Position numbers and translations under genes: made by a program. A stretch of 64,000 bases of DNA, from contig OZ025737.1 in the NCBI GenBank assembly GCA_964019335.1, forward strand, positions 62,001-126,000, written 5' to 3'. This DNA is from Diplonema japonicum. Its lineage: Eukaryota; Protista; Euglenozoa: Diplonemea. The notes under the pieces are model-generated. The model was given only the letters and a program-made list of their open reading frames with translations. It was not told the origin of the DNA and made no database searches. Below, piece after piece: positions 50,556 to 58,243 of the stretch; the stretch's first letter is position 1; each line of letters opens with the position of its first letter.

Positions 50556-51200
50556 ATGTCACCTGTGACCTTCACCTACTTCGGTCTGATGGCGAAGGGC
50601 TTCGGGCCCATCATGTGCCTGGAGACGCACGGTGTGGAATGGGTGGGGAAGTCAGTGGCCTTTGAGAACTGGCCTGAGATGAAGAAGAGCGGGGTGTGCC
50701 CCTTCGGGCAGCTCCCCATCTTGGAGTGCGAGCACGGTGTGGTGGCGCAGTCTCAGACTGTGATGAGGTACGTGGCGAGGAAGGTCCCTGCTGCTGGTGG
50801 GAAGGACGAGAAGGAAGGGATCGTGTCGGACATGCTCCTCGGGTTGAGCGAGGACATCTTCGACGCCCTTGCCAAGGCACAGCCCACCCTCCTCGCCCCC
50901 AAGAAGGACGCTGAAGGGGTGAAGACCTTCTGGGACGAGACCCTCCCCGGGAAGCTCTCCCACCTGGAGGCCTTCTTGAAGGGGGAGGATTCCTTCACCT
51001 CCTCTGGGGTGACCATCGGGGAGCTCGCCCTGTGGTGCATCCTGCACATGATGGTTGTTGTGGGTCCCTCTTGTTTGGACAAGACCCCCAAGACGAAGGC
51101 CTTCTACACCCGCATCCTGAACCTTCCCTCCACACAGAAGGTCATCACCGGGAAGACTTCCTTCGGTGACCTTCCCAGCTTCTTCGTGAAGGCAGAGTAA
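50556..51200 (+). CDS. Glutathione S-transferase A, copy 1 (Tyr-type, sigma-like)
   Basis: FTYF N-terminal Tyr, CPFGQLPILE, AQSQTVMRYVARK, TIGELALW. Confidence 0.92.
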   Translation: MSPVTFTYFGLMAKGFGPIMCLETHGVEWVGKSVAFENWPEMKKSGVCPFGQLPILECEHGVVAQSQTVMRYVARKVPAAGGKDEKEGIVSDMLLGLSEDIFDALAKAQPTLLAPKKDAEGVKTFWDETLPGKLSHLEAFLKGEDSFTSSGVTIGELALWCILHMMVVVGPSCLDKTPKTKAFYTRILNLPSTQKVITGKTSFGDLPSFFVKAE

Positions 51201-51796: not shown

Positions 51797-52447
51797 ATGT
51801 CGTCCCTGACCTTCTCCTACCTGACGCTGTACGCAAGGGGGTTCCCTCCCATCATGTGCTTCGAGACGCACGGGGTGGAGTGCAAGGAGAACCCTCTGAC
51901 GATGGAGACGTGGCCTGCGATGAAGAAGACGGGTATCAGCCCCTTCGGGCAGCTCCCTCTCCTGGAATGCGAGCACGGTGTGATCACACAGTCACAGAGC
52001 ATCATGAGGTACGTGGCGAGGAAGGTCCCTGCTGCTGGTGGGAAGGACGAGAAGGAAGGGATCATATCAGACATGCTCCTCGGGTTGAGCGAGGACCTGT
52101 GGGGATCCCTCTCTCAAGCCCAACCATCTCTCTTCGCCCCGAAGAAGGACCCTGAAGGGGTGAAGGTTCTGTGGGAGGAGACCCTCCCTGGGAAACTGTC
52201 CTACCTGGAGGCCTTCTTTCCGAAGGGGCAACAGAACACTTTCACCTCCTCGGGGAAAACGATCGGGGAGCTCGGTCTCTGGTCCCTCTTGCACATTCTG
52301 GTTCTTCTGAAACCCACTTCCCTGGACAAGACCCCCAAGACGAAGGCCTTCTACACCCGCATCCTGAACCTTCCCTCCACACAGAAGGTGGTCACCGGGA
52401 AGACTGTCTACGGCACCCTCACAGACTTCTTCGTGAAAGCGGAGTAA
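51797..52447 (+). CDS. Glutathione S-transferase B, copy 1
   Basis: FSYL, SPFGQLPLLE, TQSQSIMRYVARK; paralog of GST A. Confidence 0.92.
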   Translation: MSSLTFSYLTLYARGFPPIMCFETHGVECKENPLTMETWPAMKKTGISPFGQLPLLECEHGVITQSQSIMRYVARKVPAAGGKDEKEGIISDMLLGLSEDLWGSLSQAQPSLFAPKKDPEGVKVLWEETLPGKLSYLEAFFPKGQQNTFTSSGKTIGELGLWSLLHILVLLKPTSLDKTPKTKAFYTRILNLPSTQKVVTGKTVYGTLTDFFVKAE

Positions 52448-53010
52448 TATAAAAAAAAAGAATAAAAAGAGGAGGCCTTTCTTGATCCATCTCTTTTTTG
52501 TTAGTCTTCTTCTTCTCTGCTTTCCTCCCCTCTCCGATTATACTCAATTATACTAATCCTATTTCTTCCCGTTACGCACAAACAAAAGAATAGCACCCAC
52601 TATGCTTTATTTTTTGTTGTTGACTATTAAAAGAAAATAAAATGAAAAAGAAAATTAAAAATCTGGTGTGCGCTGTATGTGCGTTCGAAAGAGCTGCTTT
52701 CTTTTTTTTTTTTTTATTTTTAACGTTGTGGCAGGAGGTTAGGTGTGTATTGTTGCGAACATGCTCCCCCACGACCTGTCGCCGTGAAAGAAATGTGGCC
52801 CATCGAAGGAAACCACCAGACACAATCCACTGTGGTTGTTGTTTCTCTTTTCTGCTTTCTTCTCTCTCCCCCTCCGTCCTCTTTTGGACATATGTACCGC
52901 ACTCACACATACTCGCTTGTGGGGCTTACTTGCAAATTTTAACTGTGTAAAAAAGCCAAATTAAGTTTTAAAACACCACCCCCTCCCCCCGTCAGGTAAC
53001 ACACTCAACT

Positions 53011-56000
53011 ATGTTGCGCTGTTCACGCCTTGCTTCTAGGCGCCTCCTCAGTGGGCGTGCCTCCCGCGCTCTGAAGGACACAGGCGTCAAAGTCGCAGCC
53101 GTAGAAGTTGCTCCGAAATGCCCTGTGACCAACAAGATGGGTTCGAAGACTCTAAAGACCTGTCCTGTACAAACCGAGAGAGAGCCGCAGCTTCAAAACC
53201 AGGAAGTTATTTTTGACCAGATGAATGCAGAGATGGAACTTGACATCAAGGATATCCAGGGGGACATCATCCTGGGTTTCAACAAGCGTTACAGCGTGAA
53301 CCTGGTCCTGGACTTCGTGGGGAGCAAGGACAAGGTGAAGAAATGGTTGGAAGAAGTCGTGAGTAGCAAACTGAGCACATGCCACACGGTTCGCACTCAT
53401 CGTGAGTTGCACAGAGGTGACTACACATCGCAAGCCGCATGCAACGAGGTCTTCATGAACTGCGCCTTCGGCTACGCCGGCCTCCAGATGCTTCTCAAGG
53501 GATCGCCGCTGGAATTTACACTCAAGCCGCGCAAGTCTGCCATGGAACCTGGCTTCGACGCGACATCACCCTTCGTCCTTGGGGCATGGCAGAGGTCGAC
53601 CATGACTGGCGACACAGAGTGCCGCGGGAAGTGGGACTTCGGGAAGGACCGCAACAACGACATGATGCTCACATTCGGAAGCGACAACAAGGAAGCAGCC
53701 GAGGCGTTTATTGCCGACATAATGAAAAACACAAAGGGCTTCCTGAAGCAACAGGAACAGACCTGGTCGGACCGCGGAGTAAAGGGCAAGGACCTGTTCT
53801 ACGGACACGAGCACTTCGGGTTCCAAGACGGTTTGAGCCAGCCTGAGGTGCGCGGTAAGTTCAGGAACCCAGACACCGGGAAGACGAGCTTTATTGTGGA
53901 ACGCCAGCTGTGGACCGGCGGCAACGACGAAGAAACCACGCAGTGGCGTGACTACAGCCGCCCCGGGTTCAGGTTGTGCGACACGGGTCACTTCTTGTTG
54001 GGGGAAAACTACCTGAGAGCGATCACAGACGACAGGGACGCGACCACCGACCCCGTCAAGTCCAACCTATTGAAAATCCCCCCCTACCCCGGTTGGGCCA
54101 ACAATGGGAGCTTCGTGGTGTACCGCAAGATTGAACAGCGTGTACACGACCTGTGGGAGAAGATGTACACAACGGCAAAGGATCTGGCGGCTGCGAACAA
54201 CATTCAGGACGAGGCTACGATTAAGAACCTTGCTGGCGACATTGCGGCGAAGGTTTTCGGCCGTTGGTGGGATGGAACGCCTACTGTGATGGATGCGGAT
54301 CAGATGTTCACGAAAGACTTCAACCTACCGAGGTACCCGCCGAACCTTGATGACAGCACGACGGAAGAGAATTCGAAGAAGTACATCAACGCGGTGAAGA
54401 AAGAAGCGCAGAAGAACGGCTTCGAGTACACCACCGAAGCGAGCTGGAAGTACCCCGACGGCTCGAGCAAGAAAGACATCGAAGGTATTTACCACAAGGA
54501 CCCGAATGGCACACGCTGCCCGTACGCATCGCACATCCGCAAGGTCAACCCTCGTGACGAGTTCACTGACGTGGGAGGGAAGGTGGAAACACTGCGCCAC
54601 CGTCTGCTCAGACGTGGAAACAACTACGGGACACGTGTGAAGGATGTATTCGCAGCTACTGGGGGAGACGACAAGGTCAGGCGTGGTCTTGCGTTGAATA
54701 TGTACCAGGCTGACATCGAAGAACAGTTTGAGTTCGTCCAGCGCCACTGGGCCAACAACAACAGCCGTCCTGTTGGCACAGGTGATGACATGGTCATCGG
54801 CCTAAGCTCCAAGCCGAAATCCATCACTGTCACAGTGAACGTTCCAGGTGTGGGCGACAAGACTGTGGAGATCGCAACAGAAGATGGTGTTCGTGACTAT
54901 ACCTACAGCGCAGGGATGGGCTACTTCCTCGTTCCGAGCATCTCGGCTATCAATGATGTGCTGTGCTGGAAGAAACCCACCGAAGAGTTTAAATTGCCGA
55001 TCCCCGCAGAGGTAAAACCCCAAAAGGAAACGTACAACCCCCCTGCGTGCCAACGCGACTTCAAGAAGCCGGCGACCTTCAACATGTGGACGAAGTTCGT
55101 CAAGGATCAGTTTAACACCGCCATCTGGGCGCTCACAGAGGACACGATTGAGCACGCTGGTGATAACCTGTACCCGCCGCATGGTATTGCCTACCGTCTG
55201 CCGGACCCCGCAAAGATTGCGTATGATTTCGACGACCTTAGCAAGAAAACCCCGTTGCAATTCCGTTCCACAAACGACATCCTCCGCATGGCAAAAGCTC
55301 TGAATGAAACCCCCGTCAGCAAGGTTATAGCATGGACGGGTTTCCCGAAGCAGGTGAAGACAAAGTACGAGGAGACGATGACCAACATGTACGAGGTGTC
55401 CGATCTGATCACCACCAACGACCCACGTTACAGCACCACATACAACACTAGAGGGTACCAGGACGAGTACTGCGAGTGGTTCAAACACACCGACAAGAAC
55501 GGGAAAATCACCCGCGTGGACTTCACGAACGAGTCCCCCGAGTACTGGACCTTCCTCGCAGAGACCGAGCCCGACACCGCACTGGCGCTTTACAGAAAGT
55601 ACATCTCGAAGGATGTTAAAAAACAAGACCTGTACATCCTCAAGGAAGAGAAAGTTTCACAGGAAGGTGATGCTGCACCAAAGACAAAGAAGGTGTGGAG
55701 GTACAACATATTCAACAAGTGGAACACGACGCACGGTGCGATGCATCTTAACCAGCCAAACAACTCACTTGCTGCGGAAATATACATCGCGGCCGAAGCG
55801 GCCATGAAGTGGGGGTGTACCAGCGAAGCAGCCTTGGAAAGCCCTCAGGCTCTGATCGGGTGTGCCCAGTACGGCCAGCCAGCACGTGCATCGGATCCTT
55901 TAATCGGTGCCAGTGTGAACGCGTTGGTCCGTCAGGACATGATCGTGTCGATCGAGGACCCTGTGGGTCTGTACTTTAAGGACTTTGACACATCTGGGTG

Positions 56001-56409
56001 GTCGAAGCCAGACGGAACACCATTCACCAAAAAAGAGATTGAAAAAATAGTACACTACGAACGTGGAACGAGAAGCAAGACCCCCCTCGACCCCTCCAAG
56101 CCCAGCCAGAACCTCCGTGTCAGGGTAGAAGTCCCTGCCTCAATGGGGTTCAAGCTTGGTGACTGCACCATTGGCGGTGTCCCCATCAAGTATGCAGGGC
56201 AAATCGCTGAGGCCTCTGTTACTGTGTACCTTAATGGATTGGCCATTAACGGAAAAGAGCTTCTGGAGGACACTGAGGTTGTCCTTTGTAAGGAACAATG
56301 GAGGCAGGAAAACAAGAACGGCGAAGGTGGTGTTGGTCCGCAATTACCTTCTGACTACATGCCTCTGTACCCTCCGTCGCCCTCGGAGCCTAAAGCTTCT
56401 TCAGCGTGA
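53011..56409 (+). CDS. DyP-type heme peroxidase fused to a C-terminal domain of unknown function, with a predicted mitochondrial presequence (1132 aa, intronless)
   Basis: DIQGDI..GF, EHFGFQDGLSQP (GxxDG), NGSFVVYRKIEQ, CPYASHIRKVNPR (proximal His), LLRRGNNYG (distal Arg), QFEFVQRHW; N-terminus MLRCSRLASRRLLS. Confidence 0.9.
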   Translation: MLRCSRLASRRLLSGRASRALKDTGVKVAAVEVAPKCPVTNKMGSKTLKTCPVQTEREPQLQNQEVIFDQMNAEMELDIKDIQGDIILGFNKRYSVNLVLDFVGSKDKVKKWLEEVVSSKLSTCHTVRTHRELHRGDYTSQAACNEVFMNCAFGYAGLQMLLKGSPLEFTLKPRKSAMEPGFDATSPFVLGAWQRSTMTGDTECRGKWDFGKDRNNDMMLTFGSDNKEAAEAFIADIMKNTKGFLKQQEQTWSDRGVKGKDLFYGHEHFGFQDGLSQPEVRGKFRNPDTGKTSFIVERQLWTGGNDEETTQWRDYSRPGFRLCDTGHFLLGENYLRAITDDRDATTDPVKSNLLKIPPYPGWANNGSFVVYRKIEQRVHDLWEKMYTTAKDLAAANNIQDEATIKNLAGDIAAKVFGRWWDGTPTVMDADQMFTKDFNLPRYPPNLDDSTTEENSKKYINAVKKEAQKNGFEYTTEASWKYPDGSSKKDIEGIYHKDPNGTRCPYASHIRKVNPRDEFTDVGGKVETLRHRLLRRGNNYGTRVKDVFAATGGDDKVRRGLALNMYQADIEEQFEFVQRHWANNNSRPVGTGDDMVIGLSSKPKSITVTVNVPGVGDKTVEIATEDGVRDYTYSAGMGYFLVPSISAINDVLCWKKPTEEFKLPIPAEVKPQKETYNPPACQRDFKKPATFNMWTKFVKDQFNTAIWALTEDTIEHAGDNLYPPHGIAYRLPDPAKIAYDFDDLSKKTPLQFRSTNDILRMAKALNETPVSKVIAWTGFPKQVKTKYEETMTNMYEVSDLITTNDPRYSTTYNTRGYQDEYCEWFKHTDKNGKITRVDFTNESPEYWTFLAETEPDTALALYRKYISKDVKKQDLYILKEEKVSQEGDAAPKTKKVWRYNIFNKWNTTHGAMHLNQPNNSLAAEIYIAAEAAMKWGCTSEAALESPQALIGCAQYGQPARASDPLIGASVNALVRQDMIVSIEDPVGLYFKDFDTSGWSKPDGTPFTKKEIEKIVHYERGTRSKTPLDPSKPSQNLRVRVEVPASMGFKLGDCTIGGVPIKYAGQIAEASVTVYLNGLAINGKELLEDTEVVLCKEQWRQENKNGEGGVGPQLPSDYMPLYPPSPSEPKASSA

Positions 56410-57025
56410 AAATGATGTTTAAAAAAGTTTAAAAAAAAAAAATGATGATAAAAAATTTTTTGCGGTGTAGAAAGGGTTTAACTTCCTGCAGGGGTTTTTT
56501 TTTAACCTTTGTCTTTCCCCGACCCTTGCTTGAGCGAAGAATTATATTGTTATTTTTTTTTTTTTTTTTTTATTATTTTATAATTAAAGATTAAAAGAAT
56601 TAAGATTAAAAAAGAAGAACACATTCAAACTCTCTGAACAAAAAAAAATTTTTAATTCTTTTTTTTTTTTTTTTTACTCTTTAGTAACTTCTTCTCAGTT
56701 TTACTTTTTCTTTTTTATATATCCTGTCCCTTGAGAATCCCTATATAAAGGCGTTATGGGAAGAAGGGGAAAAAAAAAAAAAAAGAAAAGAAAACCTGTG
56801 TTACATCTCTCTCTTTCCCCCTTTTTAATAAACTTCGGAGTTTAAAACAAGTGTTGCAAAAGGGTCGAAAAAAAAATTAATAATACCTTCCTTATTATTA
56901 ATGCCGTATTTTTTTTTTTTTTTATATATATCTTTTTATATCTTTTTTATAAAAAAAAAAATACAATACTTTCCCTTTTTGTAGTGCAGTTTCATTCACC
57001 GTGTACTTTCCCACGAACGACCCAT

Positions 57026-57066
<41 letters not shown>

Positions 57067-57598
57067 GGGCAGCAAGGCCCTTGGCCAGGCCGCCGCACAG
57101 GTTAGAATCTCTCTGATGTGTCGTCCTTTATGATACACTTGGAGCCGTATGACTTGTGTTACCTTAACGTTAAAAGATCGATTTCCCCCCCCCCCCCCCC
57201 TCCCTTACACCTTCCTCTTTGAGTGATCATTGAGCTGCTCCCCTCTCGCCCCTTTCTTCCTCTCTCCTATTTTCGGAAACCAATTCTTTTTTTTTTTTTT
57301 TTTTTGGCAAAGCCACGATCGATTGCCGTGTTGCCGTGTTGCCGTGCTCGTTATGGTTCTCATGTGGGGGGGAGAAATGAGAACAATAAAAAGAACATCT
57401 ATACGAGACGCACAAATGCCAGAAAATACGGTTTCTTTTTTTTTTTTCCTTTTCTTTTTCTTCTCTTTTTTTGCTCTACATCCCTCTTTTATTTACTGTT
57501 ATTTTTATTTCTTTTTGAAAGGTTCAGCCCACAAATTTCTTTACCCCTTACAACAAGCTTCACATTTAAAAAAACAAAAACAAAAAAAAACCACACAA

Positions 57599-58243
57599 AT
57601 GTCACCTGTGACCTTCACCTACTTCGGTCTGATGGCGAAGGGCTTCGGGCCCATCATGTGCCTGGAGACGCACGGTGTGGAATGGGTGGGGAAGTCAGTG
57701 GCCTTTGAGAACTGGCCTGAGATGAAGAAGAGCGGGGTGTGCCCCTTCGGGCAGCTCCCCATCTTGGAGTGCGAGCACGGTGTGGTGGCGCAGTCTCAGA
57801 CTGTGATGAGGTACGTGGCGAGGAAGGTCCCTGCTGCTGGTGGGAAGGACGAGAAGGAAGGGATCGTGTCGGACATGCTCCTCGGGTTGAGCGAGGACAT
57901 CTTCGACGCCCTTGCCAAGGCACAGCCCACCCTCCTCGCCCCCAAGAAGGACGCTGAAGGGGTGAAGACCTTCTGGGACGAGACCCTCCCCGGGAAGCTC
58001 TCCCACCTGGAGGCCTTCTTGAAGGGGGAGGATTCCTTCACCTCCTCTGGGGTGACCATCGGGGAGCTCGCCCTGTGGTGCATCCTGCACATGATGGTTG
58101 TTGTGGGTCCCTCTTGTTTGGACAAGACCCCCAAGACGAAGGCCTTCTACACCCGCATCCTGAACCTTCCCTCCACACAGAAGGTCATCACCGGGAAGAC
58201 TTCCTTCGGTGACCTTCCCAGCTTCTTCGTGAAGGCAGAGTAA
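57599..58243 (+). CDS. Glutathione S-transferase A, copy 2
   Basis: Same protein as 50556-51200, offset 7043 bp. Confidence 0.92.
   Translation: MSPVTFTYFGLMAKGFGPIMCLETHGVEWVGKSVAFENWPEMKKSGVCPFGQLPILECEHGVVAQSQTVMRYVARKVPAAGGKDEKEGIVSDMLLGLSEDIFDALAKAQPTLLAPKKDAEGVKTFWDETLPGKLSHLEAFLKGEDSFTSSGVTIGELALWCILHMMVVVGPSCLDKTPKTKAFYTRILNLPSTQKVITGKTSFGDLPSFFVKAE

What the first reader, a model, noticed from the sequence alone, without database searches (positions are those of the whole stretch)
53011..56409. Mitochondrion-targeted DyP peroxidase fused to a large uncharacterised domain
Seen: an intact DyP catalytic set (GxxDG, SHIRK, RRG) in aa ~75-655, then about 450 aa of well-formed non-repetitive sequence (QDEYCEW, ITRVDFTNESPEYW, NKWN..HGAMHL..PNNSLAAEI, YGQPARASDPLIG, DPVGLY); no introns; Arg/Ser/Leu-rich presequence. 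Established: DyPs are mostly bacterial or fungal and usually single-module. Inference, from recollection and unverified: the C-terminal part resembles a hypothetical protein encoded next to dyp genes in bacteria. If so, this is a horizontally acquired two-gene module fused and retargeted to the mitochondrion, and the fusion hints at an undescribed peroxidase-partner oxidative system.
Basis: partly seen in the sequence, partly recalled or inferred. Interest (0 to 1): 0.85.

Follow-up and report, generated by a model that had tools for sequence, protein, structure and literature searches.

The report
DyP peroxidase fused to its unknown partner
This protist gene joins a haem peroxidase (DyP) to a domain of unknown fold and function that sits next to dyp genes in bacteria and is fused to DyP in either order elsewhere, pointing to an unstudied two-part oxidative enzyme system whose chemistry remains unknown.

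Summary
Window 53011-56409 (+) is one intact 1132-codon ORF. Residues ~77-655 are a class V (C/D-type) DyP with the distal Asp (D273), proximal His (H508) and RRG arginines. Residues 670-~1105 form a well-conserved domain that carries only the uncharacterised Pfam tag PF26676.

In 80 metagenome loci of stand-alone bacterial homologues, dyp lay immediately downstream in 55 and divergently upstream in 7. It was absent in 3, and 15 could not be tested. Fusions exist in both orders. A third branch of the family instead sits in an operon with a secreted cytochrome P460-like haem-c protein. The family therefore looks like a general partner of haem oxidoreductases.

Two parts of the reading are not shown:
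- Recent horizontal acquisition. The same fusion occurs in a choanoflagellate and a diatom at about 40% identity, and its gene order is the reverse of the bacterial operon.
- Mitochondrial import. This rests on N-terminal composition only; the 5' end was not covered by reads.

No paper on the fusion or the family was found. The scan also noted this stretch in another window (s1-862293).

The parts
52981..52996 (+). Polypyrimidine run followed by AG, about 15 nt upstream of the ATG: a candidate spliced-leader acceptor that would leave ATG 53011 as the first AUG of the mRNA
   Evidence: Read directly from the sequence. This is inference only; no read covers the 5' end.
53011..56409 (+). Whole gene: 1132-codon ORF plus stop, with no intron
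53011..53085 (+). Arg/Ser/Leu-rich N-terminal head (aa 1-25): a candidate mitochondrial presequence
   Evidence: 6 Arg, 1 Lys and no Asp/Glu in the first 22 residues; the other eukaryotic fusions have no such head. Import was not tested.
53086..53238 (+). Poorly conserved spacer (aa 26-76) between the head and the DyP domain
   Evidence: Alignment A4: the homologues' N-termini do not align until the conserved L-x-[VI]-x-[DQE]-IQGD at aa 77-85.
53239..54975 (+). DyP-type haem peroxidase domain (aa 77-655), class V (C/D-type), with lineage-specific insertions
   Evidence: TIGR01413 E 1.9e-31. PDB hits 7anv, 2d3q, 4g2c, 5c2i. D273, H508, R534 and R535 are invariant in 15 fusions.
53827..53829 (+). 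Codon of D273, the distal Asp of the GxxDG motif (FGFQDG)
54532..54534 (+). Codon of H508, the proximal haem ligand (SHIRK)
   Evidence: Aligned to the AHIRK motif of 7anv; invariant in A4.
54610..54615 (+). Codons of R534-R535 (RRG), which include the distal Arg
54976..55017 (+). Short linker (aa 656-669)
   Evidence: Variable columns between the two conserved halves of A4.
55018..56325 (+). PF26676-family domain (aa 670-1105) of unknown function. The predicted alpha/beta fold has no PDB match.
55474..56064 (+). Span holding the family-invariant polar residues E822, E841, N902, H912, N918, R959, S961 and R1018: the candidate active or ligand site
   Evidence: Invariant in 96 diverse family members and in the fusions; codon positions. 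Their clustering in space could not be checked because no coordinates are returned.
56326..56406 (+). Low-confidence Pro-rich C-terminal tail (aa 1106-1132)
   Evidence: pLDDT below 50 for model residues 438-463.

Best explanation
The gene encodes one polypeptide that joins two proteins which work as a pair.

Shown: the N-terminal half is a class V DyP haem peroxidase with all catalytic residues. The C-terminal half belongs to the uncharacterised PF26676 family. In bacteria that family is encoded immediately beside dyp in a self-contained two-gene module, and it has been fused to DyP independently in both orders. Another branch of the family pairs with a secreted cytochrome P460-like haem-c protein.

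Inferred: the PF26676 domain is the substrate-specific component. It is an enzyme or ligand-binding module with a conserved polar pocket (E822, E841, H912, N902, N918, R959, S961, R1018), possibly metal-binding. It makes, binds or presents a small molecule that the neighbouring haem then oxidises, with H2O2 in the DyP case; alternatively it supplies the peroxide. Fusion channels this step.

In this protist (Diplonema japonicum according to earlier scan notes) the protein has gained an Arg/Ser/Leu-rich head and probably acts in the mitochondrion. The substrate is unknown.
For: DyP half: TIGR01413 109.6 bits, above the cut-off. It is aligned to solved DyPs with the proximal His and RRG in register. 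D273, H508, R534 and R535 are invariant in 15 fusions.

Partner link:
- Of 163 family proteins collected, 23 also contain DyP: 19 as DyP-then-domain and 4 as domain-then-DyP. Pfam confirms DyP in P0103 and P0120.
- Of 80 metagenome loci of the stand-alone branch, 55 have dyp directly downstream on the same strand, 7 have it divergently upstream, 3 have none and 15 are cut by contig ends. Pfam DyP_N confirms two of these dyp genes.
- No third gene is conserved in these loci.
- The same arrangement is seen in Massilia horti (L011) and a Polyangiaceae MAG (L059).

C-domain tree (FastTree, 192 rows): three well-supported clades follow the type of partner.
- 35 rows: all DyP-then-domain fusions, including the window.
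- 65 rows: all domain-then-DyP fusions plus the dyp-adjacent genes.
- 47 rows: genes paired with CxxCH proteins.

Conserved polar residues: ten invariant and about 30 nearly invariant columns across 96 diverse members.

The ORF is kept intact across the junction in a ~97%-identical relative, with changes mostly at third codon positions (21 third, 15 first, 4 second, of 40 listed).
Against: Nothing shows what the C-domain does. It has no known fold, no cofactor motif and no characterised relative. Whether the invariant residues form a pocket could not be checked, because model coordinates are not returned.

A channelled small molecule is only one way to read a conserved gene pair. The same data fit a protein-substrate or a scaffolding role.

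Mitochondrial import rests on composition alone, and the start codon is not confirmed by RNA.

Both trees are FastTree only, with long branches flagged.
Confidence: 0.55

Rival explanations
1. The C-domain is not an enzyme for a small molecule. It is a protein substrate or cofactor-bearing partner of the haem domain. The peroxidase would oxidise one of the domain's conserved Trp/Tyr residues to create or recycle a protein-derived cofactor or metal site, as MauG does for methylamine dehydrogenase and MbnH for MbnP (from general knowledge).
For: Many nearly invariant aromatic residues (W, Y) sit beside the invariant polar ones. The pairing is strictly one-to-one with a haem protein of either type. 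A copper chaperone SCO1/SenC lies inside the Massilia cluster. DyPs are known for long-range oxidation through surface Trp/Tyr radicals (general knowledge).
Against: No residue could be shown to lie near the haem domain. In the haem-c branch 64 of 75 partners have a signal-peptide-like head but only 11 of 75 family proteins do, which argues weakly against a physical complex there. SCO1 was seen in one locus only.
Confidence: 0.15
2. The C-domain is a non-catalytic accessory: a binding, anchoring or regulatory module that brings DyP to a polymeric or surface substrate or gates its activity.
For: Other family members are fused to unrelated enzymes: a subtilase in P0070 and a PLD-like domain in P0111. 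This is what a portable binding module would show. No cofactor motif was found.
Against: The domain has ten invariant, mostly charged or polar, residues across very distant members. It also occurs as a stand-alone protein of 370-500 aa in an operon. Both features are more typical of an enzyme than of a binding module.
Confidence: 0.2
3. One reading: a bacterial dyp-partner operon was recently transferred to this lineage, fused there and retargeted to the mitochondrion.
For: The operon is abundant in bacteria. The nearest stand-alone DyPs that carry a source organism name are bacterial. The fusion is patchily distributed among eukaryotes. Only this orthologue has a presequence-like head.
Against: The fusion is shared with a choanoflagellate, a diatom and other protists, and is only 39-44% identical to them, so the fusion event predates this lineage. 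The fusion's gene order is the reverse of the operon. The C-domain clade that contains the window also holds a stand-alone animal protein. Deep branches of the DyP tree are unsupported.
Confidence: 0.15
4. The long ORF is an artefact, and two separate genes or mRNAs are really made.
For: None found, except that no RNA read evidence for a single transcript could be obtained.
Against: There is no stop across 1132 codons. The linker is short, and 14 full-length homologues have the same architecture. Contigs from a ~97%-identical relative span the junction at 55018 without a break.
Confidence: 0.03

Closest known systems
Class V (C/D-type) DyP peroxidases, e.g. Bjerkandera adusta DyP (2d3q), ancestral D-type DyP (7anv), Amycolatopsis DyP2 (4g2c), Anabaena AnaPX (5c2i)
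   Same: Homologous catalytic domain. The GxxDG Asp, the proximal His in AHIRK/SHIRK and the RRG arginines are all in register.
   Different: Those enzymes are single-module proteins of about 450-500 aa. Here the DyP part spans about 580 aa with insertions and is followed by a 440-aa PF26676 domain. Identity to stand-alone DyPs beyond the fusion clade's own close relatives (P0169, P0170, ~38%), including all that carry an organism name, is only 26-31%.
Bacterial two-gene module [PF26676 gene]-[dyp] (e.g. L011:7380-10419 in Massilia horti; L091, L101)
   Same: The same two protein families, evidently one functional unit. The C-domain is 41-43% identical to the bacterial dyp-adjacent genes.
   Different: Here they form one polypeptide in the reverse order (DyP first). 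The bacterial module is itself uncharacterised.
MauG / pre-methylamine dehydrogenase and MbnH / MbnP (haem peroxidase-type enzyme plus a dedicated partner protein; from general knowledge)
   Same: A haem oxidant genetically coupled one-to-one to a non-haem partner protein.
   Different: No sequence or fold relationship. Those haem proteins are di-haem c-type enzymes. No modified residue is known here.
Catalase-related allene oxide synthase-lipoxygenase fusions of corals and cyanobacteria (from general knowledge)
   Same: A haem enzyme fused to the enzyme that makes its peroxide substrate, which is a precedent for the channelling model.
   Different: No homology on either side. The C-domain model shows no lipoxygenase fold.
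EfeB of the EfeUOB iron-uptake system (the name that some sources give to homologues)
   Same: DyP superfamily.
   Different: TIGR01412 scores 32 bits against a cut-off of 428. No efeO or efeU context was seen in the bacterial loci. The EfeB name on P0004 is not supported.

Membership tests
DyP-type peroxidase superfamily (TIGR01413; PF21105 + PF20628) | Profile match above the curated cut-off | tested here: met
   TIGR01413 109.6 bits vs 100.5. PF20628 21.4 vs 20. PF21105 21.0 is below its cut-off of 27.5.
DyP-type peroxidase superfamily | Distal Asp in a GxxDG motif | tested here: met
   FGFQDG 269-274; D273 is invariant in 15 fusions and aligned to 7anv.
DyP-type peroxidase superfamily | Proximal His haem ligand and distal Arg | tested here: met
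   H508 (SHIRK) and R534/R535 (RRG) are aligned to AHIRK and RRG of 7anv and are invariant in A4.
DyP-type peroxidase superfamily | Binds haem b and has H2O2-dependent peroxidase activity | not testable with these tools
   Needs expression and assay.
Class V (C/D-type) DyP | Closest to D-type (fungal) and C-type (DyP2, AnaPX) enzymes rather than A- or B-type | tested here: met
   The top PDB hits that could be classed from their names are D-type (7anv, 2d3q) or C-type (5c2i, 4g2c), at E 2.4e-29 to 7.7e-14; the 20 listed hits reach 5e-13. Named nearest stand-alone relatives include 'DyP2' of Nocardia.
EfeB deferrochelatase/peroxidase (TIGR01412) | Equivalog profile above cut-off | tested here: not met
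   32.3 bits vs 428.
PF26676 (uncharacterised Pfam family) | Carries the family's Pfam hit | tested here: met
   The precomputed tag PF26676.1 is on the window's own protein P0001 and on every homologue listed. The model is not in the local Pfam copy, so its name and boundaries could not be read.
PF26676 (uncharacterised Pfam family) | Conserved motifs R-x-Q-D-E-Y-[CL]-E-W, [TS]-x-E-x-P-E-Y-W, N-K-W-N...H-L...N-[ST]-L-x-A-E, R-x-S-D-P-x-I-G and P-V-G-L-Y | tested here: met
   All are present in the window protein and across 96 members.
Mitochondrial matrix-targeted protein | N-terminal presequence rich in Arg/Ser/Leu/Ala and free of acidic residues | tested here: met
   6 Arg, 1 Lys and no Asp/Glu in the first 22 residues.
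Mitochondrial matrix-targeted protein | Presequence is on the mature mRNA, and import and cleavage are demonstrated | not testable with these tools
   No read covers the 5' end. No predictor or localisation data were available. A comparison with this genome's ATP synthase beta head was abandoned because that gene model is interrupted.
Cytochrome P460 / c'-beta family (bacterial partner of the long-form branch, not of the window gene) | Beta-sheet haem-c fold with a C-terminal CxxCH | tested here: inconclusive
   [not shown]

The most novel reading that the evidence does not exclude
PF26676 proteins are a new-fold enzyme class that works only together with a haem oxidoreductase: DyP in one branch and an enlarged cytochrome P460-like haem-c protein in another. 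Together they form an undescribed two-component oxidative system that runs from soil bacteria to protists and marine animals. This protist (identified as a diplonemid in earlier scan notes) has the fused form and has moved it into the mitochondrion.
Probability: 0.35. Interest if true: 0.8.

Novelty: new variant of a known kind. Interest (0 to 1): 0.62.

Why it matters
DyP peroxidases are widespread, but their physiological substrates are mostly unknown. A dedicated, co-evolving partner domain gives a concrete handle on what at least one large DyP clade really does. The partner is genetically locked to DyP by an operon in bacteria and by fusions in both orders.

The partner family is large: 804 cluster representatives, and 553 loci in the bacterial and archaeal species-genome collection. 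It has a confidently predicted fold with no solved relative and no published function. Its alternative pairing with a P460-like haem-c protein suggests a shared chemistry built around a haem oxidant. For diplonemids, abundant marine heterotrophs, it would add an unusual oxidative enzyme to the mitochondrion if the targeting is real.

Tried and rejected
- Sequence searches of the C-part against local Pfam, NCBIfam and PDB, as a single sequence and as a 96-row profile: nothing.
- ESM Atlas. The window part gave no usable hit. P0021 gave scores of 0.81-0.83 to short ADP-ribosyltransferase-like clusters, with 64-79 of 256 shared features and low recognition. I rejected this as chance: the lengths, motif order and fold search do not agree with it.
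- PF26676 is not in the local Pfam copy, and no paper mentions it.
- Literature searches for the fusion or the operon found nothing relevant; one query was malformed.
Neighbourhoods were obtained through the search for related loci instead. The first attempt, with the 96-row alignment, had no conserved stretch.
- A 401-genome sample of one phylum found the family only in the starting genome, so that route was dropped.
- hhalign of the P460-like partner against the fusions found no relation.
- Reads. Only Logan contigs were available and no run is on record as RNA. The apparent poly(A) end at 56442 coincides with a genomic A-run, so expression, the spliced-leader site and transcript ends remain unproven. 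The look-up of sequencing runs failed twice before it answered.
- Presequence comparison with this genome's ATP synthase beta was abandoned because that gene model is interrupted.
- Signal-peptide scan of the bacterial pairs was suggestive but inconclusive.
Full report
**1. Observation**

The ORF listing finds a single ORF at 53011..56409 (+) of 1132 aa. The open frame begins only 13 codons upstream of the ATG. The gene is single-copy in the 62.5-Mb assembly for both halves with these queries. Earlier scan notes name the organism Diplonema japonicum; I did not verify this. The same stretch was noted before, from another window, as a GST/DyP/GST cluster (s1-862293). I confirm GST-like ORFs on both sides, and one of them is repeated with an identical translation.

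**2. The DyP half**

- NCBIfam TIGR01413 scores 109.6 bits against a cut-off of 100.5, E 1.9e-31. The two Pfam DyP models match weakly.
- The best solved relatives are D-type (7anv 2.4e-29; 2d3q) and C-type enzymes (5c2i, 4g2c).
- The HMMER alignment puts FGFQDG, SHIRK and RRG in register with the catalytic Asp, proximal His and distal Arg region of 7anv.
- In an alignment of 15 full-length fusions, D273, H508, R534 and R535 are invariant.
- The EfeB equivalog model fails (32 vs 428 bits), so the 'EfeB' name that one source gives to a homologue is not supported.

**3. The C-terminal domain**

- Residues 670-1132 match nothing in the local Pfam or NCBIfam libraries or among PDB sequences, even as a 96-sequence profile.
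- In the large protein collection, the window protein and all its homologues carry the precomputed tag PF26676.1. That model is not in the local Pfam copy, and no held paper mentions it.
- An exhaustive HMMER search found 804 cluster representatives at E<=1e-3. Most are stand-alone proteins of 370-600 aa, and all that carry a name are 'hypothetical' or 'uncharacterized'. They include a Fluviispira protein and a sea-star protein.
- Across 96 diverse members, ten columns are invariant. In window numbering these are E822, E841, N902, H912, N918, R959, S961, I965, P984 and R1018. About 30 more columns are nearly invariant, many of them aromatic.
- The Cys of QDEYCEW alternates with Leu, so it is not a cofactor residue.
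- AlphaFold2 with this alignment gives a confident alpha/beta model: pLDDT 87.9, pTM 0.88, with disorder only at 41-52 and in the last 26 residues.
- On this evidence the fold has no solved relative. Two caveats apply: the model has 463 residues and was not re-folded in parts, and no AlphaFold-DB search was possible.

**4. Is the domain linked to DyP beyond this gene?**

Yes, in three independent ways.

(a) Fusions.
- Of the 163 family proteins collected, 23 also contain DyP.
- 19 have the order DyP-then-domain. These include a choanoflagellate (Didymoeca costata), a diatom (Epithemia) and other EukProt entries.
- 4 have the order domain-then-DyP. One of these lies on a 3.7-Mb contig, hence probably bacterial.

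(b) Operons.
- A metagenome scan with an alignment of the stand-alone branch returned 80 loci.
- dyp lies directly downstream on the same strand in 55, usually 30-100 nt away, and divergently upstream in 7. It is absent in 3, and 15 contigs end too early to tell.
- Pfam confirms DyP_N in two of these downstream genes.
- No third gene is conserved, so the module is self-contained.
- The same arrangement occurs in Massilia horti and a Polyangiaceae MAG.

(c) Co-clustering on the tree. A FastTree of 192 C-domains resolves three well-supported clades that follow the type of partner.
- 35 rows (support 99): all DyP-then-domain fusions, including the window, plus ten rows of unknown context that include the sea-star protein.
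- 65 rows (support 98): every domain-then-DyP fusion and both dyp-adjacent genes.
- 47 rows (support 99): the haem-c-associated genes described in section 5.
- The domain-then-DyP fusions are scattered within their clade (five changes for five rows), so operon genes have fused repeatedly.

**5. A second kind of haem partner**

- In the bacterial and archaeal species genomes the family occurs at 553 loci.
- The 80 best loci, a long form of about 600 aa, have a conserved gene of ~500 aa a median of 18 nt downstream on the same strand in 77 cases.
- Most of these downstream ORFs carry a single C-terminal CxxCH. In a scan of 75 such ORFs, 64 have a hydrophobic N-terminal head.
- Neither Pfam nor PDB sequence searches recognise it, and hhalign finds no relation to the fusions.
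- I read it as an enlarged P460-like haem-c protein, at moderate confidence.
- A few loci pair a further family member with a different CxxCH protein of ~600 aa.
- Scattered neighbours include a tyrosinase, SCO1/SenC and a cytochrome-d1-like propeller.
- So the family is associated with a haem oxidoreductase in every context I could read.

**6. Evolution**

- The DyP halves of the fusions form one clade: 18 rows at support 100, or 23 rows at support 95 when the reverse fusions are included, with a long-branch warning.
- That clade is nested among metagenomic and bacterial C-type DyPs. Those that carry an organism name are 28-31% identical. The operon DyPs form their own 36-row group. Deep branches are unsupported, so no donor can be named.
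- The window protein is only 39-44% identical to the other eukaryotic fusions. The fusion's order is the reverse of the operon.
- The fusion therefore predates this lineage and is not a simple read-through of the common bacterial arrangement. Recent horizontal acquisition is not supported, and ancient transfer cannot be excluded.

**7. Targeting and expression**

- The first 22 residues hold 6 Arg and 1 Lys and no acidic residue. The other eukaryotic fusions start directly at the DyP domain or with acidic heads.
- A pyrimidine run followed by AG lies about 15 nt upstream of the ATG, consistent with a spliced-leader acceptor that keeps this ATG.
- Only assembled contigs of public runs were available, and none is on record as RNA.
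- Two runs of the same organism reproduce the locus exactly.
- Two runs of a ~97%-identical relative give contigs that span the domain junction at 55018 unbroken. Their changes are mostly at third codon positions (21 of the 40 listed; 15 first, 4 second).
- The 5' end is not covered. The apparent poly(A) end coincides with a genomic A-run.
- Mitochondrial import is therefore a reasonable inference, not a result.

**8. Mechanism**

Shown: an intact DyP is covalently joined to a member of a family that is genetically locked to haem oxidoreductases.

Inferred (about 0.55): the C-domain is the substrate-specific component. It is an enzyme or ligand-binding module with a conserved polar, possibly metal-binding, pocket, and the small molecule it makes, binds or presents is oxidised by the haem. 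Alternatively it supplies the peroxide.

Rivals:
- A MauG/MbnH-like relation, in which the haem domain oxidises a residue of the partner (0.15).
- A non-catalytic binding or regulatory module (0.2). Fusions of other family members to a subtilase and a PLD-like domain point this way.
- A gene-model artefact (0.03).

The substrate is unknown.

**9. Verdict**

The dyp-neighbour recollection is strongly borne out; horizontal transfer and mitochondrial location are not shown.
- The gene is a new member of a catalogued but unstudied fusion family.
- The underlying DyP-partner module, its alternative P460-like pairing and the unmatched fold are, as far as the searches reach, undescribed.

There is no spliced model here.

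Noticed in passing
window 50556-51200, 51797-52447 and 57230-58243: GST-like genes flank the DyP-fusion gene (Pfam GST_C_3 and GST_N for the first two ORFs, which were the ones scanned). The ORF at 50556-51200 recurs with an identical translation inside 57230-58243, so the gene lies between long direct repeats, as noted in s1-862293.
   Followed up: partly
[not shown]
   Followed up: partly
L042:9968-16719 (+), Enhygromyxa salina: Four same-strand, overlapping genes: long-form family gene, P460-like partner, a 633-aa CxxCH protein with no Pfam match, and a second family gene. Nostoc (L013, L014) has the same 'other CxxCH protein + family gene' pair.
   Followed up: partly
L013:3194-4954 (-); L011:5184-5759 (+); L011:59-1858 (+): Redox neighbours inside the bacterial clusters: a tyrosinase (Nostoc), and an SCO1/SenC copper chaperone and a cytochrome-d1-like beta-propeller (Massilia). 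None is conserved across loci.
   Followed up: no
P0070, P0111, P0078, P0098 (family members): Other fusions of the PF26676 domain: to a subtilase (P0070), to a PLD-like domain (P0111), and within proteins of 1650-1700 aa that have no other recognised domain.
   Followed up: no
P0169 and P0021: The closest stand-alone DyP (582 aa) and the closest stand-alone C-domain (448 aa) both come from a contig of 5993 nt, probably the same one. That would be a split (unfused) version within the fusion clade.
   Followed up: no
window 52451-52468 and 56421-56441: Short, similar A-rich 3'-flank motifs downstream of the GST gene and of the DyP-fusion gene produce an apparent 'joint' (52468 to 56421, 21-nt sides) in contigs of run X4.
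   Followed up: no
L166 (G000:C70:390385-394851) and L165: One ATP synthase beta copy in this genome has an in-frame T-rich insert and no ATG at the head of its open frame (intron-like). The other copy has one in-frame TGA.
   Followed up: no
runs X1 and X2 laid on window 53338-56442: A close relative (~97% identity; organism codes A and B) carries the same fusion gene. Its kind (RNA or DNA) is only guessed.
   Followed up: partly
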